NCBI GenBank assembly: GCA_964106915.2
Contig: OZ066924.1
Source of the DNA: Podarcis gaigeae
Taxonomy: Eukaryota
DNA length: 64,000 bases
Strand: one strand, 5' to 3'
This document shows, one piece after another, positions 9,830 through 38,849 of this stretch. Positions within the stretch are counted from its first letter, which is position 1. Each line of letters opens with the position of its first letter. Under the pieces are notes generated by a model. That model did no database searches. It worked only from the letters and a program-made list of their open reading frames with translations, and had not been told where the DNA came from. The translations under genes were made by a program, and so were the position numbers.

Positions 9830-10544
9830 GAAGAAATCAGTTGTGGGTGCTCTGCTCCGTGTGTGTGTGTGTGTGTGTGTGTGTCCGCCTTGCTGTGCTG
9901 CCTGCTCTCATCTTTCCCGAGGAGGAGCTCGTTCGTTGCTTTTTGTCACATTGCTTTTTGCCACTGAATGGATAATAAAATTAAGGAATTGTTTCATGCC
10001 AGGGTGTGCGGGGGAGAGGGAGGGTGTGGGGCTGCATGGCTCCAGGCAGAAACACGGAGGAGGAGGAGGAGGAGTTGAAGTAACAGGAGCTGCACGGCAG
10101 TGGCGGCAGCAGCAGCAGCGGCGGTGGCGGCTTTCCTTTTCTTTCCCAGCACAATGCTGAAGAGAAGGACGAAGTTGAGCTGCTCCTCTGGCTGTCTGGG
10201 AAACTGAACGCAGGCTGGAGATCCAAGCTGTGCCTTGGAAGGGCCTTTCTAGAGCAGCGCTTCCAGAGTGACCTCGCCGCTCCTTCGGCTTCTCTGTTTC
10301 TCCTGCGGGCTCAGGGCAGCTGTGGATTTTTTTGATTTAAAAAGTCTTCCACTTTACACTTCCTGCCGCCTGGATGCTGTGGAGCCCGATGCCTTTCCCA
10401 CCACGACCCGTGAAAGACCCCACCCTCGCCCGGGGCTGCTCCTTCTGGGAAAGGGAGCTTTCGTAGTCTTTCACTTTCCTTTGATTTCCCCAAGTTTCTT
10501 TTCTGTTTGCATTTCCTTATGCTTTTGTGTGTTTTAGCCGCAAG
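9830..10544 (+). promoter_or_regulatory. putative internal promoter and non-coding first exon of the bMunc13-2 transcript
   Basis: Locally GC/CpG-richer, with (TG)n, (GGA)n and GCA/GCG tracts; ends in a consensus donor CAAG|GTAAGT at 10544/10545. The downstream big exon has an acceptor and an in-frame stop before its ATG. The 5' boundary is a guess. Confidence 0.5.
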
Positions 10545-16778: not shown

Positions 16779-18256
16779 TGGACTTCCTGGCTCTGCTCCG
16801 AGTGCCTGTTCCTCTCCTCCTCCTCCTCCTCTTCCTCCTCCTCCTCCAGGACCCTTCAGCACCCACTATTTTACCCCTATTTATTTTTAAGGAACAACTG
16901 CAAATGTTAACTCTCGCCAGGTTTATGGTAAATCTTTCTTACCGATGCAAAATAATAGTTACAGAAACTGGCTGAGTTTCTTGCTCACTAGGCCAGTCGC
17001 AGTTGGTGTAGAATTATGTAATTGTCCAAGGTTTCAATTCTGTGAAACCTTGCATATTTCTCAGTTGCGAGGAGGTGGCCCAATAAAAATGTCTTCTGTA
17101 TTATATGCGTATCTCATGCCACTAGTCCCCACTGGAGTAACAGCAAGGAAAGAGGCACCTATCTTCTTCCAAACCGCTTAAGTTTTTTTGCGCAATGAAG
17201 AGGCATGTAAATTTTGTTAAAGTCATAAAAAGAAGTGTATTCCTGCCTCCTAGGAGATTGCAATCTAACCTTCAACATGGGGAGGGGGAGAACGTTCTGT
17301 TCACTTGCCTGTATCTTCATTAAGGGATGAGGACTAAGTGGTTGTGCTGAGCCTTCCCTTAACTGATTTTAGGATATTAGCAGATGACCTTAAAGCTATA
17401 AAAAGAAAGCTTCTGTGTGCAGGCAAGGCCTTATCTGTGTGTTCTTTCATCATTTTTCTTGTGAAAATGATAGCTGCACACAGACAGATCTGTGCCCATA
17501 CAAAGACGTACCTTGAAGCTGGAACTGGCTTGTGCCTGCGCCTCTTAGGGAGCAGGGCAGAGCTGCTGGCTGCCTGCCAAGGAGCACTTTGGGCAGGTAA
17601 TGGATAGGCCAGGATATGGTACCTGAGGGGGATAAATAGAGAGGGCTCTGCTGCTAAGACTTCAGTTTTGATAAAATTCCGGTCTCCGTGGTGGAAAAGG
17701 AAACCATTCTCATAAAGCAAATTTGGGGAGGGGGGGCTGAAGCTGAAGGGATCCTTTACTTGTTTGCAAAAGTCAGGGAGACCTTCCTGCTCACCACTTG
17801 GGCCCCAGGACCTTCATTCAGTTGGAAGGCTGAAATGGAACAGCAGGTTATACCGGCATGCTTGCGAAAATAGATTTGTCCTGCTGCACGGGTGCAATTT
17901 TGTTGGATTACGTGGCCCAAGCTAGTGTGTGTGTGTATGTGTGTGAATGTGTGCGTCGCTTTTTTCTCCACTGACTCCGATACACAGTGTCTCTGTCCCT
18001 TCTCTTGACAGCAGCTTCTGATGAGTCTTAATCCTTGGCCGAGAGAGCCTTGCTGGGCGGGCAGCGAGGGGCACAGGCCTCTGCCGCTTAGTGGCATGAT
18101 GAGAGGGCGCCAACACGGCCGCTGAGGATGTGTGCCGGCAGATGCACCCTAAGGCTAGAAGATGACATTGCTTCTGTGCTTAGAACGTCTGCTGTGAAAC
18201 TCTTAACTGGGCAGCCCTCTCAGAAGCAGAAGGCCCTGCTGTTTCTGGAGGAGAAG

Positions 18257-20603
18257 ATGAAGAAGCTTCTGCAAGGGCCGGCGAGCGAGCTCTCCCTGAG
18301 CCAGAATCACCACCAGCAGCTTTCCCTCGTGGAAATAGAAACGGACACCTTTGTCTGTGGCGTCAATAGGAAATCTGCAAGCAGTGACTTTTCCGCTGCT
18401 CAGGGGAGGAGCCCTGGGACCAGGGAGGCCAGTAATGGTGGGCTGGACTGGGATGGATACATCGAAGTCCCACGGGCGCTAGTTCCAAGCCAGTGTGACT
18501 TAGGGGGCGTCTCCGGCTGCCTGGCCTCAGAGAGCCTTCTGGAGCAAATGGAGAGCCCCGAGGAGCAAGCCGATCTCGCTGCCCTGAGCCTTGGCACCAA
18601 CTGGAGGGGAGTTGCTGGGGAAAGAGAAGGGGAAGGGCCCTGCCCTCCAAGCAAGCCCCTCGCCTACACTCCCTGCAGCCCTGGGCCCAGAGACCGCTCT
18701 GCCGATGTCATTGAGTACATCGTGAAAGAGCTCCAAGGGATAAGTCGCATCCAGACCGAGATTGCTGAGCTCCAGCAGCACCTCACCTTGATCAAAGGCT
18801 CCGTGGACGAAGTCTCCAGCTGCGTGGACACTGTTCTGAGCGAGATTGAGGGCCTGCAGAGCAGCTCTGGCCCCACCAGCAAAAACTCCCCGTTGCCAAA
18901 GGCCAAGGCCAGGGAGCCCCTCCTGGGAGGGCCCATCAGAGAGCCAGTGTTGTATTTTTATGGCATCCCAGAGCAGGAGGGGGAGAACACCAAGGAGCTA
19001 GTCCACCGTTTCTTGTCAGAGTACCACTGTTTCAATGGCATTCAGCGTAGCAAGTACATCAAGGATGCTTACAGATCTGGTGCAGCAACAGGCAAGCAGC
19101 TGGCCCCACGACCCGCTGTTGTAAAGCTTGCTAACGCTGAGCAGCGAGACTTCATTCTCCAGAAATCGATTCTTTTGCAAAGTGCAGGAGTTACCATTGT
19201 GGCCAGCAGTGAGCAAAGCCAGCAGAACGGCCAGGTGGGTCCTGGGGCACAGCTGGGCACCTTGCCCTCGCCAGGCCAGAGTGGGAACCACTGGGGCTCC
19301 TTGCACATTCGTGGGGAAGTGGTCAGGACAGATGGAGATGGGCAGCTCCAGGTGGACTCTTGCCAGGCTCAGCAGGAAAACGCTTGCCAAGAGGTTCACC
19401 ACCGCATAGGGGAGAGGCTTAACTTTCAACCGAAATCCACCCTACCTAGGAAGAGCAACTTAATTGCTGAACTTGAAGAAAAAGTAGGGAGAGTTGTACA
19501 AATAATGGGCACTAGTGAGCAGACTTTGCACAGAAGCAGCTCTTCCAGTGGAGTCCTTGATGCGTCCCACAAGAAGCTGGAAGGCCCTGGGCATGAGAAC
19601 AAAGGCAGGGATTCCTTGCCATCCCCGGAGTGCTTGGGCAAGGTGCCCGCCTTGTGTGAGGGAGGAGGGGGACGTGCTTCAGATGCTGAAAATGCCACCA
19701 AGGGCAGCTCCTCTCCTGTGGAAGAGGACCAAGCAGGAGGGCTGACTCCAGGGGAAAGCGAGACGGACTGTGATGCCACCACGCTGGAGTTTCTCAGTCC
19801 TGAGCAAGTCAGTCTCCTGGAGGAGGCACCGGTGGCCATGACCACTCCCGGCTGTGATGGTGCTCTGCGCAAATTGGTTGACAGCAGTGAGACGCTCAAA
19901 GACATGATCCAGATTGACCTGAACGAGCAAGACCCAACCGATCAGGTCTTCAGGGATGTCCTAGAAAATTCCCAGTACTTCCTTGAGCACTCTCGGGACA
20001 GCATTGATCTCGTGGACATGAGGTTTTACACTAACAAACTGGGCAAAGCACTGAATCACTTCCGGTCTGCGCTGCAGGTGGTGTTCCACAAACTGGAGAC
20101 CGGGGACCCAGAAGTCCTCCTTGAAGGGGAAAAGAGCTTCCATATGAACAGTGAGCCAGCTCCTGCCCTCCGTAGCCCAAGTGTGCACGGCAGCTTGGAT
20201 ACCTTTGCTGAAACCCCCCCTAGTCAGTCTTCTGAGAGCCAGGCTAACACGACTGTGAGCAGTGACAGTGTGGGCCTGATTCAGAGAACTCTTCCCAGTG
20301 CTTCATTGCCTCTTGACGAAGCTCCGGTCCCCGACCTGGTGCCCCCACCGGATTCTGAGAGCTGTGTGGAGCAGCCCTTCCCCTCTGGAGAGGCCCAGCA
20401 GGATCCGGGTTCTGCACCTGTGCAGCCCGGCGGGTGCCGACCTATGAGCCTCGAGAAGGTGTGTGCCGAGACCATCTACCTGAACAAGTGCATCAACAAC
20501 TTCAAGAATGTCCTGAGGGAAAAGAGGCAGATGCGTCGGAGGCTCTTGAAGGAACTGGCCCAGGAGGCAAGCTGGACTTCCTCGGCTGAAGAGATTCATT
20601 CAG
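18257..20603 (+). CDS. UNC13B: bMunc13-2-specific large N-terminal coding exon (coiled coil, ORF1p-RRM-like segment, two calmodulin-binding helices)
   Basis: 835-codon ORF 18128-20635. ATG 18257 (MKKLL) matches the recalled rat bMunc13-2 start MKRLL; ATG 18128 is an in-frame alternative. In-frame TAG at 18089. Donor CAG|GTACTC after 20603 (phase 1). Probable acceptor tcttgacag|cag at 18011/18014. Confidence 0.9.
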
Positions 20604-23600
20604 GTACTCCCAAAGTTCTTGAGATTTGCTGGTGAAATGCTTGCTCATTTTTTGTCAGAAAGTTTAGCAGCTGCAGGCAGAATGATTAAATAGAAATGGT
20701 TTATTGAAGTTTGGTCATAGATAGCAGATGATAAAAGCCAAAGACAAAGGCTGCCCTATCTCTGCACCCTTAACAAATGCAAAAAAACACACAAAACTCC
20801 AGTTTCTGGAGGTCTGCCAAATGATTTGTGATGTTCTATCTCCAAGGAAGCAGACATTGACTTCAGATCTGCTTCTTGGCAAACTGAAAGCATGTTGGGA
20901 AAGTGTTTCCAATACCATCCACTTGGAAGCACGAGCTTTTCCATGTCTCTTTACTTTCACAGGAAATATTGAACTAGGAGCCAGTTGCCATTTCCCATAT
21001 AAATTTGCCAGGGAAGCTGAAATCGCCTGAAATGTTTAAATAACCACCTCCAAGGAAGAGCTCCGCTAGAACACTGTTTCCCTCCATGTGCCCCTTGAGA
21101 AATCCACATAAGAGGTGTTCTGTTGGAGTGCAGAATTCATGTGGATCGTACCCTCCATTATGTTTGTCATGTGCCTTACTTCAAGAGCCCTCTTCTGTGG
21201 AGTTTATATTGAGGACTGTTCAGATGATAATCAGTTGTGGGGTCCACGTGAGCTGCTTCTTAGCGATTGTAGGCACTTGAGATTCCAATTGGGTTAGGCT
21301 TCGTGTTTTATCTTTGTGGGTTTGTGAAAGGGGAAGAGCAGAAGCAAAGGGGAAGAGCAGAAGCAAAATTCATCAGAAGCGTCACCCAGCGAGATTCAGG
21401 GAGCTGCTTTGGTCCTTATGTACTACTGAGCTGCAAAAGGACCATGTCTTGGGGGCGGGGGGGGCACCACCTGCTCACTCGCTAAAATAAGCAAAAGATT
21501 TGCACATAGCTGACCCTTGGGTATAGTGGCAAAGGCGCTTTCAGCTCCCCCCTAAGGAATGCCCCACCTGATTCCAGACACTCATGTGTGATGCATGTTT
21601 TCTGAAATTGCGTCCACGTGGGCCCACAGTAGCCCCCTCCACCACACTGGACAGCAGCGCCTGTCTCCAAGGATAAAGATTAGGCTCACTCTCCCCTCCT
21701 CCTTTTGCTGTGTGCATTATTACAAAGACAGAACATCATGCCTAGGACAGTTTGACACATTGCCCCGTGTGGGAGAATGACTTCTCTCAGAACTCTGCAG
21801 TCCATGCGCCCAGGCCAGAACCACAGTGGCTTCCCACAGCGGCAACATCAAGTCGTAGTGTAGTCTGCATGCACATCTCCCACATTTATGGGGCATGCCA
21901 GATGCACACATGGAAGGCACGCAGTGCTTCTGCAGTGTATGAAAGGGCTCTTGATGGTGGGATGACAGCAACTCCCACTTTCCAAGACAAGCCTCATGTC
22001 TTCCTCCAAACTTCATCTTTCCCTGCTTAGAGCGGTTTTCCAAATACTTTTAACGTGTTGTGTCGCAGCTGTGCTTCGGAAGGAAGAACACCAAGTTGAA
22101 CAAGTGTTGGGCTTGGGAGAGCTGGACTCTCATCCTTGCTCACTCACAGGCTGAAGGCTGCTTCACACATTAGGGGAACAACCACCTCCCTGATGCACAC
22201 TTTTCTTTGATGCTTGAAGGCGAGATGCATGGAAGGAAGACGTGGGAAACTTGCAGGAGCTGTGATTGGCTGCAATTCCCACTCTGGGCAGGCTGGAACC
22301 TCTTGCCATTTGATTTCTGCCGTTCTAAAACAGGGTTGTGGGGGGTTTCCTCCTCTGCAGGACTAAAGGAAAGCAGCACGGCACTTTCAACACTTTAAAT
22401 GATTTTCATAAATCATGGGTCGTAAAATTCTCTAGCAGAGTTATGGATAGTGCAGAAGGTTTGAGGCTCAATATTACTGTGGAAATAGTGGTTTTTATGA
22501 GGCAAGGATCCTGCCACAAAATGGTCCCAGGCAATGATAATTCTAGTAAATTAAAATGCCCTAGCCATCCATCCTGTGGCTAGAAAATTTACTCCAGGTC
22601 GTTATAAAATCAGCTTATTAGGGTTGGAGGCAGAGAAGTTATTTTTGCTGAGGGCTGGCAAAAGTTTGGAGCATTTGCCATCTTCCTTCATAAGAAACCT
22701 TGATCTTACTCAGAATAGCTCGTTTCTAAGTAGAGGCAGTTTCTGACTGCAAACCACATTAGCCTTTTGTGTTCAGGTAACAATTAAGAACAACAATGGA
22801 AGCCCTTGGAAATCAATGGCTGACATTGTGGCGCCATTGGGGAGCTTGTGACAAACTATTCATTTTCCTAATTTCTTGTTCTTTGATTTGACAACAAATA
22901 TTTACCAAAACTGAAATGGGAACAGTTGCTAAAATCTGCCAGCAATTTAGTGCTAGATTTTTCAAGTAATGCTTCAGTTCTCTTTAGAAAACAGATGGGA
23001 GAAGGATTCATTTCTCCTCCACCTGTTAAATCACTGCTCATGTGTGTTCCTTTTGTGCATGTTTTCATTAGGGAATGGAAGATTTAGAATTTGAAACAGG
23101 AGAGAGAGAGAGAGAGAGAATGAGAATGAGAATGAATGGGGCAAAGGTGGGCCTGATGTTTCAGACTCCTAAGTCCCCAATTCTTTCTTTGTTCTTTTAT
23201 GCCCAAGAAAAACTAGATGACGTTTACTAAGAAAATGTGCTTTTGTTGTAATGAAGAAGCTTGATTCAGAGCACACCCTGTCAGGCATTTTCCTTGGGAC
23301 AGTTTCAGATGAACTTCAGAGGTGATGGTTGGGTGCGTTTCTGGTATGTCAGCTCCTTGTTTGAAAATTAGATTCTTCTGGCATGGGGCTCTCTCTCTAG
23401 GCGTAATCCTAACCCCTTTACCAATTTTATTTCACTTTTTGAAAGCCAAGGGTCATCTACTTTTTGGATAATAACTGCCACACGGGCTCCCCCCCCCTTT
23501 TTGTTTTGGCCAGCAGTCACCATTATGGATTAAAATTACTATCCATGCAACTTTCTTAAAAGTAAAAAGCCATATTCTACTGCATGATGCATGTACACTC

Positions 23601-25249: not shown

Positions 25250-25272
25250 AAGGAAGTAGAGGAGAACTTCAG
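25250..25272 (+). CDS. UNC13B: 23-nt microexon, (E)GSRGELQ
   Basis: Long pyrimidine tract, then tttgcag|AAGGAAGTAGAGGAGAACTTCAG|gttata. Converts phase 1 to phase 0. Peptide EGSRGELQ resembles recalled rat EGKREALQ. Confidence 0.88.
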
Positions 25273-26203
25273 GTTATATACTGTTCATTCTAACCAGTGT
25301 GTCTCCTACTTTTGACACTCCAGTGTGTTATTCGTGCATGCCCTGTTGAATTGTCACTTGGCTGTTTGGCTGACCCCTGAAGTACCCCCCCCCCCAAGTC
25401 TCTTGGCAAGTTCAGCATGCAACAGTCTTGGGAGGAATTCCTGATCTTGTGTATGAACTGAGAGGAGTCTGTTCAGTGCAGGTAGCTTTTATAAAGGAAG
25501 AAAACATTCCTACTTAACACCTTGTTGATGTTGCAAATCCGTGTTTGCTGTGCGTACGCAGTTCCTTCCCAGTCCCAGCAGAGGATAAATGTACTGTGTG
25601 CCATGGGAAGGTTACCTGGAGTGTGTGTGTATCTGTGGGTCACAGAGGCTCAACTTTTACCTCTTGGCCAGCAGTTCTTAAAATATAAATATTATTTTGT
25701 GTTTGTCACTTTGGCAGAAGACTTGCTGCTAATTCTAAGGATTGGCAGAGCCATAATTCCTTCTGGTGCTTCTGGGCAAAATTGTTTTGTGTTTCTTGGA
25801 AGCACTGTGCAAACTCATGGGCAGAAACGGTCTTTAGGGGTCTGCAGGCTACAAGCAACAAGGGCTTTATCCTTGTGCTACCTTGAACTCAAAAGACTCA
25901 TTGTCCATTTCTAGCCATTTTATTCAGAAGTCAGACACCAGAGGGATGAAGCCCAAGAGCAACGTTCTGTAAAAAACAAAGCAGGTTTCTAATTCAGGTT
26001 TGTCTACATGTTTCTTAGCAAGATCATGCATTTGACTTTTTGGTTTAAGATTTGATAGCCTCCATGCACAGTTTCCAGGGTGAGAAGGCTGTGCATCCAG
26101 AGTTTGTCTAAATCGTGCTTCCCCAAGTGGGCTTGCTTTATTTGACTGCCGATTTAGACTCCAAATACATGTTCTGTCACTTTAATCTGACTGCATCCTT
26201 GCA

Positions 26204-38062: not shown

Positions 38063-38290
38063 GAGCGGCAGAGAAGTGCTCGAAGCATGGGGCCGAGGAT
38101 CGCACCCAGAACATCATCATGGCCATGAAGGATCGCATGAAGATCCGAGAGAGGAACAAACCAGAGATCTTTGACCTGATCAGAGATGTCTTCAGTGAGA
38201 GCAAAATGACCCACTCTCAGCAGATGAAGACGGTCAAGCAGAGCGTTCTGGACGGTACCTCCAAGTGGTCAGCCAAAATCACCATCACAG
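38063..38290 (+). CDS. UNC13B: exon, C1-C2B linker ([10 protein letters not shown]...SAKITIT)
   Basis: ttgcag|GA...ACAG|gtcagc; phase 1/1. Confidence 0.97.
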
Positions 38291-38403
38291 GTCAGCAAGG
38301 CAGCCTGAGCCGGGAGGGGGGGGAAGGTGCCTTAGCTGCTCCTGGAACTGCCTCGTGTGTTTCTTTAGCTGTGCCGTCTTGCTACGATAATGTGTTTTTC
38401 TGA

Positions 38404-38568
<165 letters not shown>

Positions 38569-38702: not shown

Positions 38703-38849
38703 NNNNNNNNNNNNNNNNNNNNNNNNNNNNNNNNNNNNNNNNNNNNNNNNNNNNNNNNNNNNNNNNNNNNNNNNNNNNNNNNNNNNNNNNNNNNNNNNNN
38801 NNNNNNNNNNNNNNNNNNNNNNNNNNNNNNNNNNNNNNNNNNNNNNNNN
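38703..38849. other. assembly gap (147 N)
   Basis: Run of n; intronic, and the flanking exons join in frame. Confidence 1.

What the first reader, a model, noticed from the sequence alone, without database searches (positions are those of the whole stretch)
18704..19207. bMunc13-2 N-terminus looks like a domesticated LINE ORF1p (coiled coil + RRM)
Seen: a heptad segment DVIEYIVKELQGISRIQTEIAELQQHLTLIKGSVDEVSSCVDTVLSEIEGLQ (18704-18859), then 18944-19207 LYFYGIPEQEGENTKELVHRFL...IKDAYRSG...APRPAVVKL...QRDFILQKSILLQSAGVTI. Known: non-LTR retrotransposon ORF1p (L1 Transposase_22 type and related CR1/L2 ORF1s) is a trimeric coiled coil followed by a non-canonical RRM with the motif order hhhxG[IV]PE..EN, IxxAHR, PRPIIVKF, xKExIL, LKGxGIxI; human L1 has LRLIGVPE..EN, IQR, PRHIIVRF, KEKML. 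These motifs appear here in order with plausible spacing, inside a 2.3-kb intronless coding exon. From memory, rat bMunc13-2 conserves this block and Munc13-3 shares the coiled coil. Inference: an ancient exaptation, comparable to L1TD1 or Arc, that might give a vesicle-priming factor trimerisation or RNA binding. I do not know of a description of it. Caveats: a 28-aa Pro/Ser/Gly linker separates coil and RRM, and the basic RRxN entry motif is lost.
Basis: partly seen in the sequence, partly recalled or inferred. Interest (0 to 1): 0.9.

Follow-up and report, generated by a model that had tools for sequence, protein, structure and literature searches.

The report
LINE ORF1p-derived domain in bMunc13-2
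The brain-specific N-terminus of the synaptic vesicle-priming protein Munc13-2 (and of its paralogue Munc13-3) contains a coiled coil plus RNA-recognition-type domain that descends from the ORF1 protein of a LINE retrotransposon, and the coiled coil is the very segment already known to anchor bMunc13-2 to active zones through ELKS1.

Summary
Window 18010-20603 (+) is the large bMunc13-2-specific exon of UNC13B in a reptile, and transcript contigs of a close relative are spliced exactly at its two ends. [quoted passage not shown] These are islands of strong purifying selection (dN/dS about 0.03 and 0.1), separated by a neutrally evolving linker.

A profile of this block finds more than 100 small proteins (E 6e-10 to 5e-5 among 1.84 billion). 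The two I checked sit directly upstream of endonuclease/reverse-transcriptase ORF2s, so they are LINE ORF1s. Further support:
- Profile-profile comparison gives 99.5% probability (E 6e-23).
- An HMM built only from those ORF1s hits the window once, at 18725-19201.
- The ORF1 set links to human L1 ORF1p (E 4e-16).
- An AlphaFold model made from Munc13 sequences alone has L1 ORF1p as its top structural matches (Z 10.7, against 8.5 or less for generic RRMs).

UNC13C carries the same module, is more ORF1-like, and is about 85% conserved from sharks to mammals. A tree joins UNC13B and UNC13C against the ORF1s, which fits one capture before the B/C split. The C-terminal domain of ORF1p is missing.

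Prior art is one Methods paragraph (Kitao et al. 2025) noting the UNC13C exon. UNC13B, and the link to the ELKS1-binding coil (Kawabe et al. 2017), are not described there.

The parts
18010..20603 (+). bMunc13-2-specific large exon of UNC13B
   Evidence: Contigs of two small runs of a close relative (X1, X2) cover 18010-20603 and nothing outside it. They leave the window sequence exactly at 18010 and 20603. The loose ends map to 10518-10542 and 25250-25273 of the window. An AG precedes 18010 and GT follows 20603. tblastn of Anolis, kiwi and mammalian UNC13B maps this exon, followed by the common UNC13B exons up to 63393.
18257..18259 (+). Probable start codon (M-K-K-L-L-Q-G). The ORF opens at an earlier ATG, 18128, that is not conserved.
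   Evidence: Residue 1 of the Anolis and mammalian bMunc13-2-type proteins aligns here. Conservation over ORF residues 1-30 is only 0.13.
18695..18862 (+). ORF1p-derived coiled-coil helix (residues 147-202 counted from Met 18257). It corresponds to the ELKS1-binding motif of mammalian bMunc13-2.
   Evidence: AF2 predicts a helix with pLDDT 92-97. 29 columns are invariant in 23 tetrapods. dN/dS is 0.02-0.04. It aligns to the coiled coil of LINE ORF1s. The three-copy model passes: score 0.53 against a best control of 0.08. Kawabe et al. mapped ELKS1 binding to rat residues 145-187, which fall inside this helix in the alignment of mammalian orthologues.
18863..18946 (+). Degenerate linker, low-complexity and rich in Pro/Ser/Gly/Lys
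   Evidence: pLDDT 34-54. Conservation 0.36. dN/dS 0.8-1.5. In hhalign it pairs without gaps with the distal part of the ORF1 coiled coil, so it looks like a decayed coil segment rather than an insertion. In UNC13C the same stretch is still helical-type sequence and invariant.
18947..19204 (+). [quoted passage not shown]
   Evidence: AF2 with a Munc13-only MSA: pLDDT 80, pTM 0.71. Top PDB structural matches are 2w7a, 2ldy, 2ykp, 2ykq and 2yko. Profile against PDB sequences: L1 ORF1p first. hhalign of the RRM alone against LINE ORF1s: 99.4%, E 5e-22, 40% identity. dN/dS about 0.08-0.13.
10518..10542 (+). 3' end of the upstream exon that is spliced to 18010 in transcript contigs (probably the bMunc13-2 5' exon)
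25250..25273 (+). Start of the next exon, joined to 20603 in transcript contigs

Best explanation
SHOWN: residues of about 147-316 of this reptile's bMunc13-2 (window 18695-19204) are homologous to the coiled coil and non-canonical RRM of a LINE retrotransposon 'type II' ORF1 protein. The C-terminal domain of ORF1p has been lost.

SHOWN: the same module, in the same position, sits in the N-terminal exon of UNC13C (Munc13-3) in all jawed vertebrates sampled.

INFERRED: the simplest history is one capture of a LINE ORF1 as an alternative 5' coding exon of an ancestral vertebrate unc13 gene, before UNC13B and UNC13C separated.

How it works:
- SHOWN BY OTHERS, in rodents: the coil is the ELKS1-binding, active-zone-anchoring motif of bMunc13-2.
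- INFERRED: it still forms an ORF1p-like parallel, in-register helical bundle. That bundle either docks, or exchanges strands with, the C-terminal coiled coil of ELKS1. This would parallel the switch between C2A homodimer and RIM heterodimer in Munc13-1 and ubMunc13-2.
- INFERRED: in UNC13B the RRM, now without a CTD or a basic loop and near neutral in charge, acts as a folded protein-interaction or stabilising module at the base of the coil, not as an RNA binder. It is kept under strong purifying selection in sharks and tetrapods. It is dispensable in ray-finned fish UNC13B, which kept only the coil.
For: Homology
- An exhaustive profile search found 397 hits at E<=1e-3. Beyond the UNC13B/C proteins there are more than 100 proteins of 140-470 aa that match coil plus RRM. 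With the RRM-only profile they still reach E as low as 3e-7, scaled to 1.84e9 sequences.
- Two of them are multi-copy and lie directly upstream of ORF2s with Exo_endo_phos and RVT_1, one in a sea urchin and one in a beetle.
- hhalign of UNC13B against the ORF1 set: 99.5%, E 6e-23. RRM alone: 99.4%, E 5e-22.
- Reciprocal test: the ORF1-only HMM scores the window ORF at 76.6 bits over residues 200-359, and is the only hit in the six-frame window.
- The ORF1 set hits human L1 ORF1p at E 4e-16. UNC13B and UNC13C profiles hit L1 ORF1p directly, at E 0.007 and 4e-7.
- 16 of 24 UNC13C sequences hit Pfam PF02994, best E 1.8e-4.
- Structure: Foldseek and VIA-align both rank L1 ORF1p first.
- All four residues of the two conserved L1 ORF1p salt bridges (E165-R215, E169-R202; review PMC6428221) align with invariant E, E, R, R in UNC13B and UNC13C.

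Host gene, not a transposon
- Spliced transcripts.
- Orthologues from shark to mammals.
- dN/dS 0.02-0.13 in the coil and RRM, against about 1 in the linker.

Single origin
- The tree splits the ORF1s from UNC13B+UNC13C with SH-aLRT 98.

Function
- ELKS1 binding was mapped to the coil (PMC5379939).
- Three-copy coil model: score 0.53, best of 3 controls 0.08. That mark was reached by 21 of 30 proteins solved as pairs of one chain and by 0 of 23 solved as single chains. The three runs agree in at least 90% of their contacts and the partner's pLDDT is 80-81. Contacts are in register at a/d-type spacing.
Against: - Pfam's L1 model does not reach its threshold on any sequence, and gives no hit at all on UNC13B.
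- The CTD, which in L1 ORF1p is needed for RNA binding, is absent.
- The direct UNC13B-to-L1 ORF1p sequence E-value is only 0.007. The case rests on intermediates (invertebrate ORF1s, UNC13C).
- The ORF1 set was picked by similarity to the query, and only two of its members were checked for an adjacent ORF2.
- The tree is unrooted, built with the 'quick' method on 127 columns.
- The trimer model comes from a tool calibrated on two copies and mostly on microbes (on eukaryotes 17 of 29, animals 7 of 16). Coiled coils are easily modelled side by side.
- Kawabe et al. report 'stoichiometric' ELKS1 binding and found that the homologous Munc13-3 coil does not bind ELKS1.
- dS is near saturation, so the dN/dS values are rough.
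Confidence: 0.85

Rival explanations
1. The RRM still binds RNA, as in ORF1p and L1TD1. Munc13-2/-3 would then tether or sense RNAs or RNPs at the active zone.
For: - The RRM fold and both hallmark salt bridges are preserved.
- Purifying selection is strong.
- The UNC13C RRM is as basic as LINE ORF1 RRMs: net charge +3.7, pI 9.1, against +4.9, pI 9.2. It also keeps Arg/Lys in the beta2-beta3 loop.
Against: - The CTD and the RRM-CTD linker arginine (R261 in L1), needed for RNA binding in L1 ORF1p, are missing. The ORF1 HMM match stops at position 175 of 231.
- The UNC13B RRM is near neutral (+1.1, pI 7.8). Its beta2-beta3 loop is shortened and non-basic in mammals.
- The adjacent coil is strongly acidic, about -7.
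Confidence: 0.2
2. UNC13B and UNC13C each captured a related LINE ORF1 independently.
For: LINE ORF1 co-option as a coding exon has happened repeatedly in vertebrates: MYL4, RFX5, NUP42, USP4 (PMC12129022).
Against: - The tree puts UNC13B+UNC13C on one side of a branch against 70 ORF1s, SH-aLRT 98.
- Both have the module at the same place, in the large N-terminal exon upstream of C1-C2B-MUN.
- Both lack the CTD.
- Their coils share specific sequence (K-E-L-Q-G-I-S-x-I-x-x-E-x-x-E-L..H) that the ORF1 consensus does not have.
Confidence: 0.05
3. The transfer went the other way: some LINEs acquired their ORF1 from a host unc13-type gene.
For: - The tree is unrooted.
- ORF1 modules are known to be shuffled among LINE lineages (PMC4120745).
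Against: - Type II ORF1 occurs in the L1, L2, CR1 and R1 clades across animals, including echinoderms and insects.
- The host module was seen only in vertebrate UNC13B/C.
- The ORF1s have the full coil-RRM-CTD architecture, whereas the host copy is truncated.
Confidence: 0.03
4. The similarity is convergence, or only a generic RRM fold with a neighbouring helix. There is no common descent with ORF1p.
For: - Generic RRMs also match the model structurally (Z up to 8.5).
- There is no Pfam hit for UNC13B.
Against: - Sequence-level significance in both directions.
- Motif-by-motif correspondence, including the salt-bridge residues.
- ORF1p outranks every generic RRM in both sequence and structure searches.
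Confidence: 0.02

Closest known systems
LINE 'type II' ORF1p (human L1 ORF1p; PDB 2ykp, 2yko, 2w7a, 2ldy; Pfam PF02994 Transposase_22)
   Same: - An N-terminal parallel coiled coil followed by a non-canonical RRM.
- Same motif order, and same residues for both conserved salt bridges.
- It is the best sequence and structure match in the PDB.
   Different: - No C-terminal domain, and no basic entry motif or basic loop in UNC13B.
- Single-copy, spliced host exon fused to C1-C2B-MUN-C2C, with no ORF2.
- Pfam threshold not reached.
- The donor clade (L1, L2, CR1 or R1) is not determined. The nearest ORF1s found are from invertebrate LINEs that also score only below Pfam's threshold.
UNC13C (Munc13-3) ORF1p-like canonical exon, noted by Kitao, Ichiyanagi & Nakagawa, Genome Res 2025 (PMC12129022, Methods and Suppl. 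Fig. S8)
   Same: It is the paralogous copy of the same module: coil plus RRM, same position in the gene.
   Different: - That paper says 'no further analysis was performed' and does not mention UNC13B.
- The UNC13B copy is more diverged: degenerate linker, neutral RRM.
- The UNC13B copy is the one with a mapped function (ELKS1 binding).
L1TD1, and Lyosin (MYL4-ORF1p fusion isoform)
   Same: Host proteins whose coding sequence derives from LINE ORF1p and is kept under selection (PMC4161310, PMC12129022).
   Different: - L1TD1 is a stand-alone gene with duplicated RRM-CTD units, and it binds RNA.
- Lyosin is restricted to sauropsids and expressed in testis.
- The Munc13 module is much older (shared by sharks and mammals), lacks the CTD, and sits in a core presynaptic protein.
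ELKS1-binding coiled-coil motif of bMunc13-2 (Kawabe et al., J Cell Biol 2017, PMC5379939)
   Same: It is the same segment. Rat residues 145-187 lie inside the helix at 18695-18862 once the mammalian orthologues are aligned.
   Different: [quoted passage not shown] It recognises neither the adjoining RRM nor the transposon origin.

Membership tests
LINE type II ORF1p (coiled coil - RRM - CTD; Transposase_22) | Significant sequence relationship to bona fide LINE ORF1 proteins | tested here: met
   - hhalign 99.5%, E 6e-23; RRM alone 99.4%, E 5e-22.
- The ORF1-only HMM scores the window at 70.8-76.6 bits.
- Two members of the ORF1 set were confirmed to lie next to EN+RT ORF2s, and the set links to human L1 ORF1p at E 4e-16.
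LINE type II ORF1p (coiled coil - RRM - CTD; Transposase_22) | Non-canonical RRM fold with the conserved E165-R215 and E169-R202 salt-bridge residues | tested here: met
- L1 ORF1p is the top structural hit: Z 10.7, rmsd 2.7 A, 89 residues aligned; Foldseek E 4e-4.
- The four salt-bridge positions are invariant E, E, R, R.
- The bridges themselves are inferred from the alignment, not measured.
LINE type II ORF1p (coiled coil - RRM - CTD; Transposase_22) | Parallel (trimeric) coiled coil directly N-terminal to the RRM | tested here: inconclusive
   - A helix is predicted and it aligns with the ORF1 coil.
- The three-copy model passes: score 0.53, best of 3 controls 0.08. The mark was reached by 21 of 30 proteins solved as pairs of one chain and by 0 of 23 solved as single chains.
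- The oligomeric state was not measured, and in UNC13B a 28-residue degenerate linker intervenes.
LINE type II ORF1p (coiled coil - RRM - CTD; Transposase_22) | C-terminal domain (CTD) following the RRM | tested here: not met
   - The ORF1 HMM match ends at position 174-175 of 231, before the CTD.
- Conservation collapses after 19207.
- UNC13C also ends at about position 184.
LINE type II ORF1p (coiled coil - RRM - CTD; Transposase_22) | Pfam PF02994 at its gathering threshold | tested here: not met
   - No hit for UNC13B, even at E<=10.
- UNC13C: 16 of 24 sequences hit, but below threshold (best E 1.8e-4).
LINE type II ORF1p (coiled coil - RRM - CTD; Transposase_22) | Encoded by a mobile element (ORF2 downstream, multi-copy) | tested here: not met
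   It is a single hit in the 64-kb window, spliced to host exons, and orthologous across vertebrates. It is therefore a derivative, not an element.
Domesticated (exapted) ORF1p-derived host coding sequence | Orthologous conservation, purifying selection and expression as part of a host mRNA | tested here: met
   - Found from shark to mammals.
- dN/dS 0.02-0.13, against about 1 in the linker.
- Transcript contigs are spliced at 18010 and 20603. These runs are only guessed to be RNA, but their coverage stops exactly at the exon borders.
bMunc13-2 ELKS1-binding motif | Positional and sequence identity with rat bMunc13-2 residues 145-187 | tested here: met
   In rodent and other mammalian orthologues the helix spans about residues 141-192 and is 29/56 invariant with the window. 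The mapping is from PMC5379939. ELKS1 binding in this reptile was not tested.

The most novel reading that the evidence does not exclude
An ancestral vertebrate unc13 gene acquired a LINE ORF1 as an alternative first coding exon before the UNC13B/C split. Since then the transposon's self-assembling coiled coil has served as an isoform-specific active-zone anchoring and oligomerisation device. This would be a homotrimer-to-ELKS1 switch, analogous to the C2A-RIM switch of Munc13-1. The still-basic RRM of Munc13-3, and perhaps that of bMunc13-2, would bind RNA or an RNP at release sites. That would couple a retrotransposon-derived RNA-binding fold to synaptic vesicle priming.
Probability: 0.15. 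Interest if true: 0.9.

Novelty: new member of a known kind. Interest (0 to 1): 0.72.

Why it matters
bMunc13-2 and Munc13-3 set release probability and short-term plasticity at defined synapse subsets. Their N-termini have been treated as 'novel' sequence of unknown origin with one short coiled-coil motif.

If roughly 170 residues are a folded module inherited from a LINE ORF1 protein, three things follow:
- It gives a structural template (the L1 ORF1p trimer) for the ELKS1-binding region.
- It predicts self-association and a second, unstudied folded domain (the RRM) that is under strong constraint.
- It adds one of the oldest known ORF1p domestications, shared by sharks and mammals, in a core presynaptic gene, alongside Arc as a transposon-derived neuronal protein.

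It also extends a one-paragraph note on UNC13C to its paralogue, and ties that note to existing functional data.

Tried and rejected
- Single-sequence searches gave nothing meaningful. Pfam on the ORF, the 168-aa block and the 88-aa RRM, and on 23 orthologues one by one, found no ORF1 family. Single-sequence phmmer against PDB gave only low-complexity and coiled-coil noise.
- The search of earlier findings near the locus returned nothing.
- The last word-indexed search, with the UNC13C profile as a stand-alone 181-aa query, was meant to pick up named vertebrate ORF1s. It returned only fragments and a few unnamed proteins. The donor LINE clade therefore could not be assigned.
- The supplements of Kitao et al., which would name the matching Dfam family, are not held.
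- Raw RNA reads of a more distant species (X23) did not map at 90% likeness or better. Expression evidence therefore rests on contigs of runs that are only guessed to be RNA.
- Cyclostome and invertebrate-chordate unc13 loci could not be examined. The lower bound on age is the gnathostome ancestor.
- I did not build or search a joined multi-exon UNC13B model. Exons were only located one at a time by tblastn.
- The N run at 38703-38849 was left untouched.
- Considered and rejected: a recent LINE insertion or an annotation artefact. There is no ORF2, the exon is spliced, and orthologues exist in all tetrapods and sharks.
Full report
**1. What is at the coordinates**

It lies in an 835-codon ORF, 18128-20635.

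The ORF is the large N-terminal exon of UNC13B. Its closest relatives are squamate, bird, mammal and frog proteins, 55-80% identical over the block. They are named unc-13 homolog B/C-like or left uncharacterised. Full-length Anolis, kiwi and mammalian UNC13B map onto this exon and then onto a series of downstream exons up to 63393.

Contigs from two small sequencing runs of a closely related species cover 18010-20603 and nothing on either side. They diverge from the genome exactly at 18010 and at 20603. The diverging ends match window 10518-10542 and 25250-25273. Canonical AG and GT flank the exon. So the exon is expressed and spliced as 18010-20603. Those runs are only guessed to be RNA, but coverage that stops at exon borders and jumps to other exons is what mRNA gives.

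The conserved start is the Met at 18257. I located exons one at a time and did not build or search a joined model.

**2. Anatomy and constraint**

[quoted passage not shown] With an alignment of Munc13 sequences only (A5), the second domain reaches pLDDT 80 and pTM 0.71.

Across 36 tetrapod exons, the coil and the RRM are conservation islands in a poorly conserved exon.

| Region (ORF residues) | Conservation |
|---|---|
| Coil, 181-240 | 0.64-0.89 |
| Linker, 241-270 | 0.36 |
| RRM, 271-360 | 0.65-0.73 |
| N-terminal flank, 91-180 | 0.21-0.26 |
| Immediately after the RRM, 361-390 | 0.25 |

Pairwise Nei-Gojobori estimates against skink, gecko, snake and emu:

| Region | dN/dS |
|---|---|
| Coil | 0.02-0.04 |
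| RRM | 0.08-0.13 |
| Linker | 0.8-1.5 |
| Rest of the exon | 0.14-0.52 |

dS is about 1, so these values are rough, but the ordering is clear.

**3. Is it an ORF1p?**

Single-sequence Pfam and PDB searches see nothing. Profiles do.

- *RRM profile against PDB.* The RRM-only profile (A3), searched against all PDB sequences, puts the four human L1 ORF1p entries first (E 0.007-0.028). The alignment runs from beta1 to alpha2.
- *Exhaustive search.* The coil+RRM profile (A2) was run with HMMER over 1.84 billion representatives and gave 397 hits at E<=1e-3. After the UNC13B/C proteins come more than 100 proteins of about 140-470 aa that match profile positions of about 15-168, with E from 6e-10 to 5e-5. 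With the RRM-only profile, many still score 3e-7 to 1e-4 at the same database size, so the signal is not coiled-coil noise.
- *These relatives are LINE ORF1s.* They are multi-copy in a sea urchin and in leaf and seed beetles. In both cases examined, an ORF with Exo_endo_phos and RVT_1 follows within 120-280 bp.
- *Profile against profile.* UNC13B against the ORF1 set gives 99.5%, E 6e-23 over 152 columns. The RRM alone gives 99.4%, E 5e-22, with 40% identity.
- *Reciprocal test.* An HMM built only from the 38 ORF1s scores the window ORF at 76.6 bits over residues 200-359. It is the single hit in the six-frame translation of the whole window, at 18725-19201.
- *Link to L1.* The ORF1 set itself hits human L1 ORF1p at E 4e-16, through coil, RRM and the start of the CTD.
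- *Structure.* The model built from Munc13-only sequences has L1 ORF1p as its best Foldseek hits (E 4e-4 to 6e-3, TM 0.58-0.66). Generic RRMs score E 3e-3 or worse and TM 0.57 or less. VIA-align gives L1 ORF1p Z 10.7-9.3 (rmsd about 2.7 A, 86-91 residues aligned), ahead of the best generic RRM at 8.5.
[quoted passage not shown] In the HMMER alignments those four positions are the E of G-x-P-E, the E of E-N, the R of A-Y/H-R and the R of P-R-P. All four are invariant in UNC13B and UNC13C.

**4. What is missing**

The ORF1 HMM match stops at position 174-175 of 231, before the C-terminal domain. Conservation collapses after 19207.

In hhalign the UNC13B linker pairs without gaps with the distal ORF1 coil. 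It therefore looks like a decayed coil segment rather than an insertion.

**5. The paralogue**

UNC13C (Munc13-3) has the same coil+RRM at the equivalent place. It was found in horse, pig, marsupial, birds, lizards, frog, many teleosts and a shark, at 65-74% identity to the query. Mean column identity is 85%.

It is closer to the ORF1 consensus (L-R-F-L-N-V-P-E, A-H-R-L-G, K-P-R-P-I-L-V-Y-F, K-L-K-G-T-G-I-x-I-S-T-D), and its coil runs uninterrupted into the RRM.
- Its profile hits L1 ORF1p at E 4e-7 over coil plus RRM.
- 16 of 24 sequences hit Pfam PF02994 below threshold, best E 1.8e-4.
- hhalign against the ORF1 set gives 99.7%, E 1e-25.

So Munc13-3 shares more than 'a short coiled-coil motif'.

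**6. History**

UNC13B of a basking shark has the RRM (E 6e-17). UNC13B of bowfin and teleosts keeps only the coil.

A maximum-likelihood tree was built from 15 UNC13B, 14 UNC13C and 70 ORF1 sequences, using 127 columns. It was made with the quick method and is unrooted. It separates the ORF1s from UNC13B+UNC13C with SH-aLRT 98; UNC13B gets 99 and UNC13C 89.

With the shared gene position and the shared loss of the CTD, one capture before the B/C split is the economical reading. The module is at least as old as jawed vertebrates.

The inference that the ancestral gene had two alternative N-termini (C2A-type and ORF1p-type), as UNC13B still does, is mine and untested. In skink, snake and emu the exon lies inside a longer gene call with C2-C1-C2-MUN-C2, which is consistent with an internal alternative promoter exon.

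The donor clade is open. Type II ORF1 occurs in L1, CR1, L2 and R1 (PMC4120745), and I could not classify the nearest elements.

**7. Function**

Kawabe et al. (PMC5379939) mapped ELKS1(771-976) binding to rat bMunc13-2 residues 145-187. They showed that deleting this segment impairs active-zone recruitment and priming, and that the homologous Munc13-3 coil does not bind ELKS1. In the alignment, mammalian residues of about 141-192 are the helix at 18695-18862. The ORF1p-derived coil is therefore the ELKS1 anchor.

A three-copy model of the helix passes the tool's test. The score is 0.53 and the best of 3 controls is 0.08. That mark was reached by 21 of 30 proteins solved as pairs of one chain and by 0 of 23 solved as single chains. 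The three runs agree in at least 90% of their contacts, the partner's pLDDT is 80-81, and the contacts are parallel and in register.

The calibration was on two copies and mainly on microbes (on eukaryotes 17 of 29, animals 7 of 16). This supports retained ORF1p-like self-association but does not show it.

The RRM core is near neutral in UNC13B (+1.1, pI 7.8). It is basic in UNC13C (+3.7, pI 9.1), like LINE ORF1 RRMs (+4.9, pI 9.2). The coils are about -7. With no CTD and a shortened, non-basic beta2-beta3 loop, I rate RNA binding by bMunc13-2 as unlikely, and by Munc13-3 as possible.

**8. Novelty**

No paper in the library holds both Munc13 and ORF1p. UNC13B with ORF1 gives only irrelevant hits.

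[quoted passage not shown] UNC13B does not occur in either text.

The kind of thing (an ORF1p-derived host exon) and the paralogue are therefore known. As far as this library shows, four points are new: the UNC13B copy, the identity of its coil with the ELKS1-binding motif, the single ancient origin, and the pattern of RRM retention and loss.

**9. Verdict**

It is a new member of a known kind. It should interest both synapse biologists and transposon biologists, and it gives clear experiments to do.

Noticed in passing
window 20468-20557 (+), ORF residues 781-810: A second, very strongly conserved island in the same exon (0.87 identity across 36 tetrapods). It is a basic amphipathic stretch just before the splice donor. 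It may be the calmodulin-binding site described for bMunc13-2; that suggestion is from memory and was not checked.
   Followed up: no
window 19928-20107 (+), ORF residues 601-660: Another conserved island (0.61-0.76) of unknown function in the otherwise fast-evolving exon. No Pfam family hits it.
   Followed up: no
window 10518-10542 and 25250-25273 (+): Exon ends joined to the big exon in transcript contigs of a related species: an upstream exon ending at 10542 (probably the bMunc13-2 5' exon) and a small downstream exon starting at 25250. tblastn with Anolis, kiwi and mammalian proteins did not pick up the downstream exon.
   Followed up: partly
window 38703-38849: A run of 147 N just after the exon block at 38065-38568.
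   Followed up: no
P0125 (446 aa, Logan contig): The best-scoring ORF1-like relative (E 6e-10) carries a C-terminal NADAR domain (Pfam E 6e-29) after the coil-RRM. This is an unusual ORF1-NADAR fusion.
   Followed up: no
Alignment A4 (LINE ORF1 set): 3 of the 38 invertebrate ORF1s give weak hits to Pfam Baculo_FP_2nd (baculovirus FP protein domain 2). This hints at a link between these ORF1s and baculovirus FP25K-type proteins.
   Followed up: no
Teleost and bowfin UNC13B (P0089-P0124): UNC13B of ray-finned fishes keeps the coiled coil (E 1e-11 to 1e-20) but has no detectable RRM. UNC13C keeps both in the same fishes. This is a natural separation-of-function experiment.
   Followed up: partly
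L001/L002 (Diadema setosum) and L003/L004 (Gonioctena quinquepunctata): Apparently intact or nearly intact LINEs, with a type II ORF1 followed by an EN+RT ORF2. L001 ORF2 is 985 aa and uninterrupted. The clade was not assigned.
   Followed up: partly
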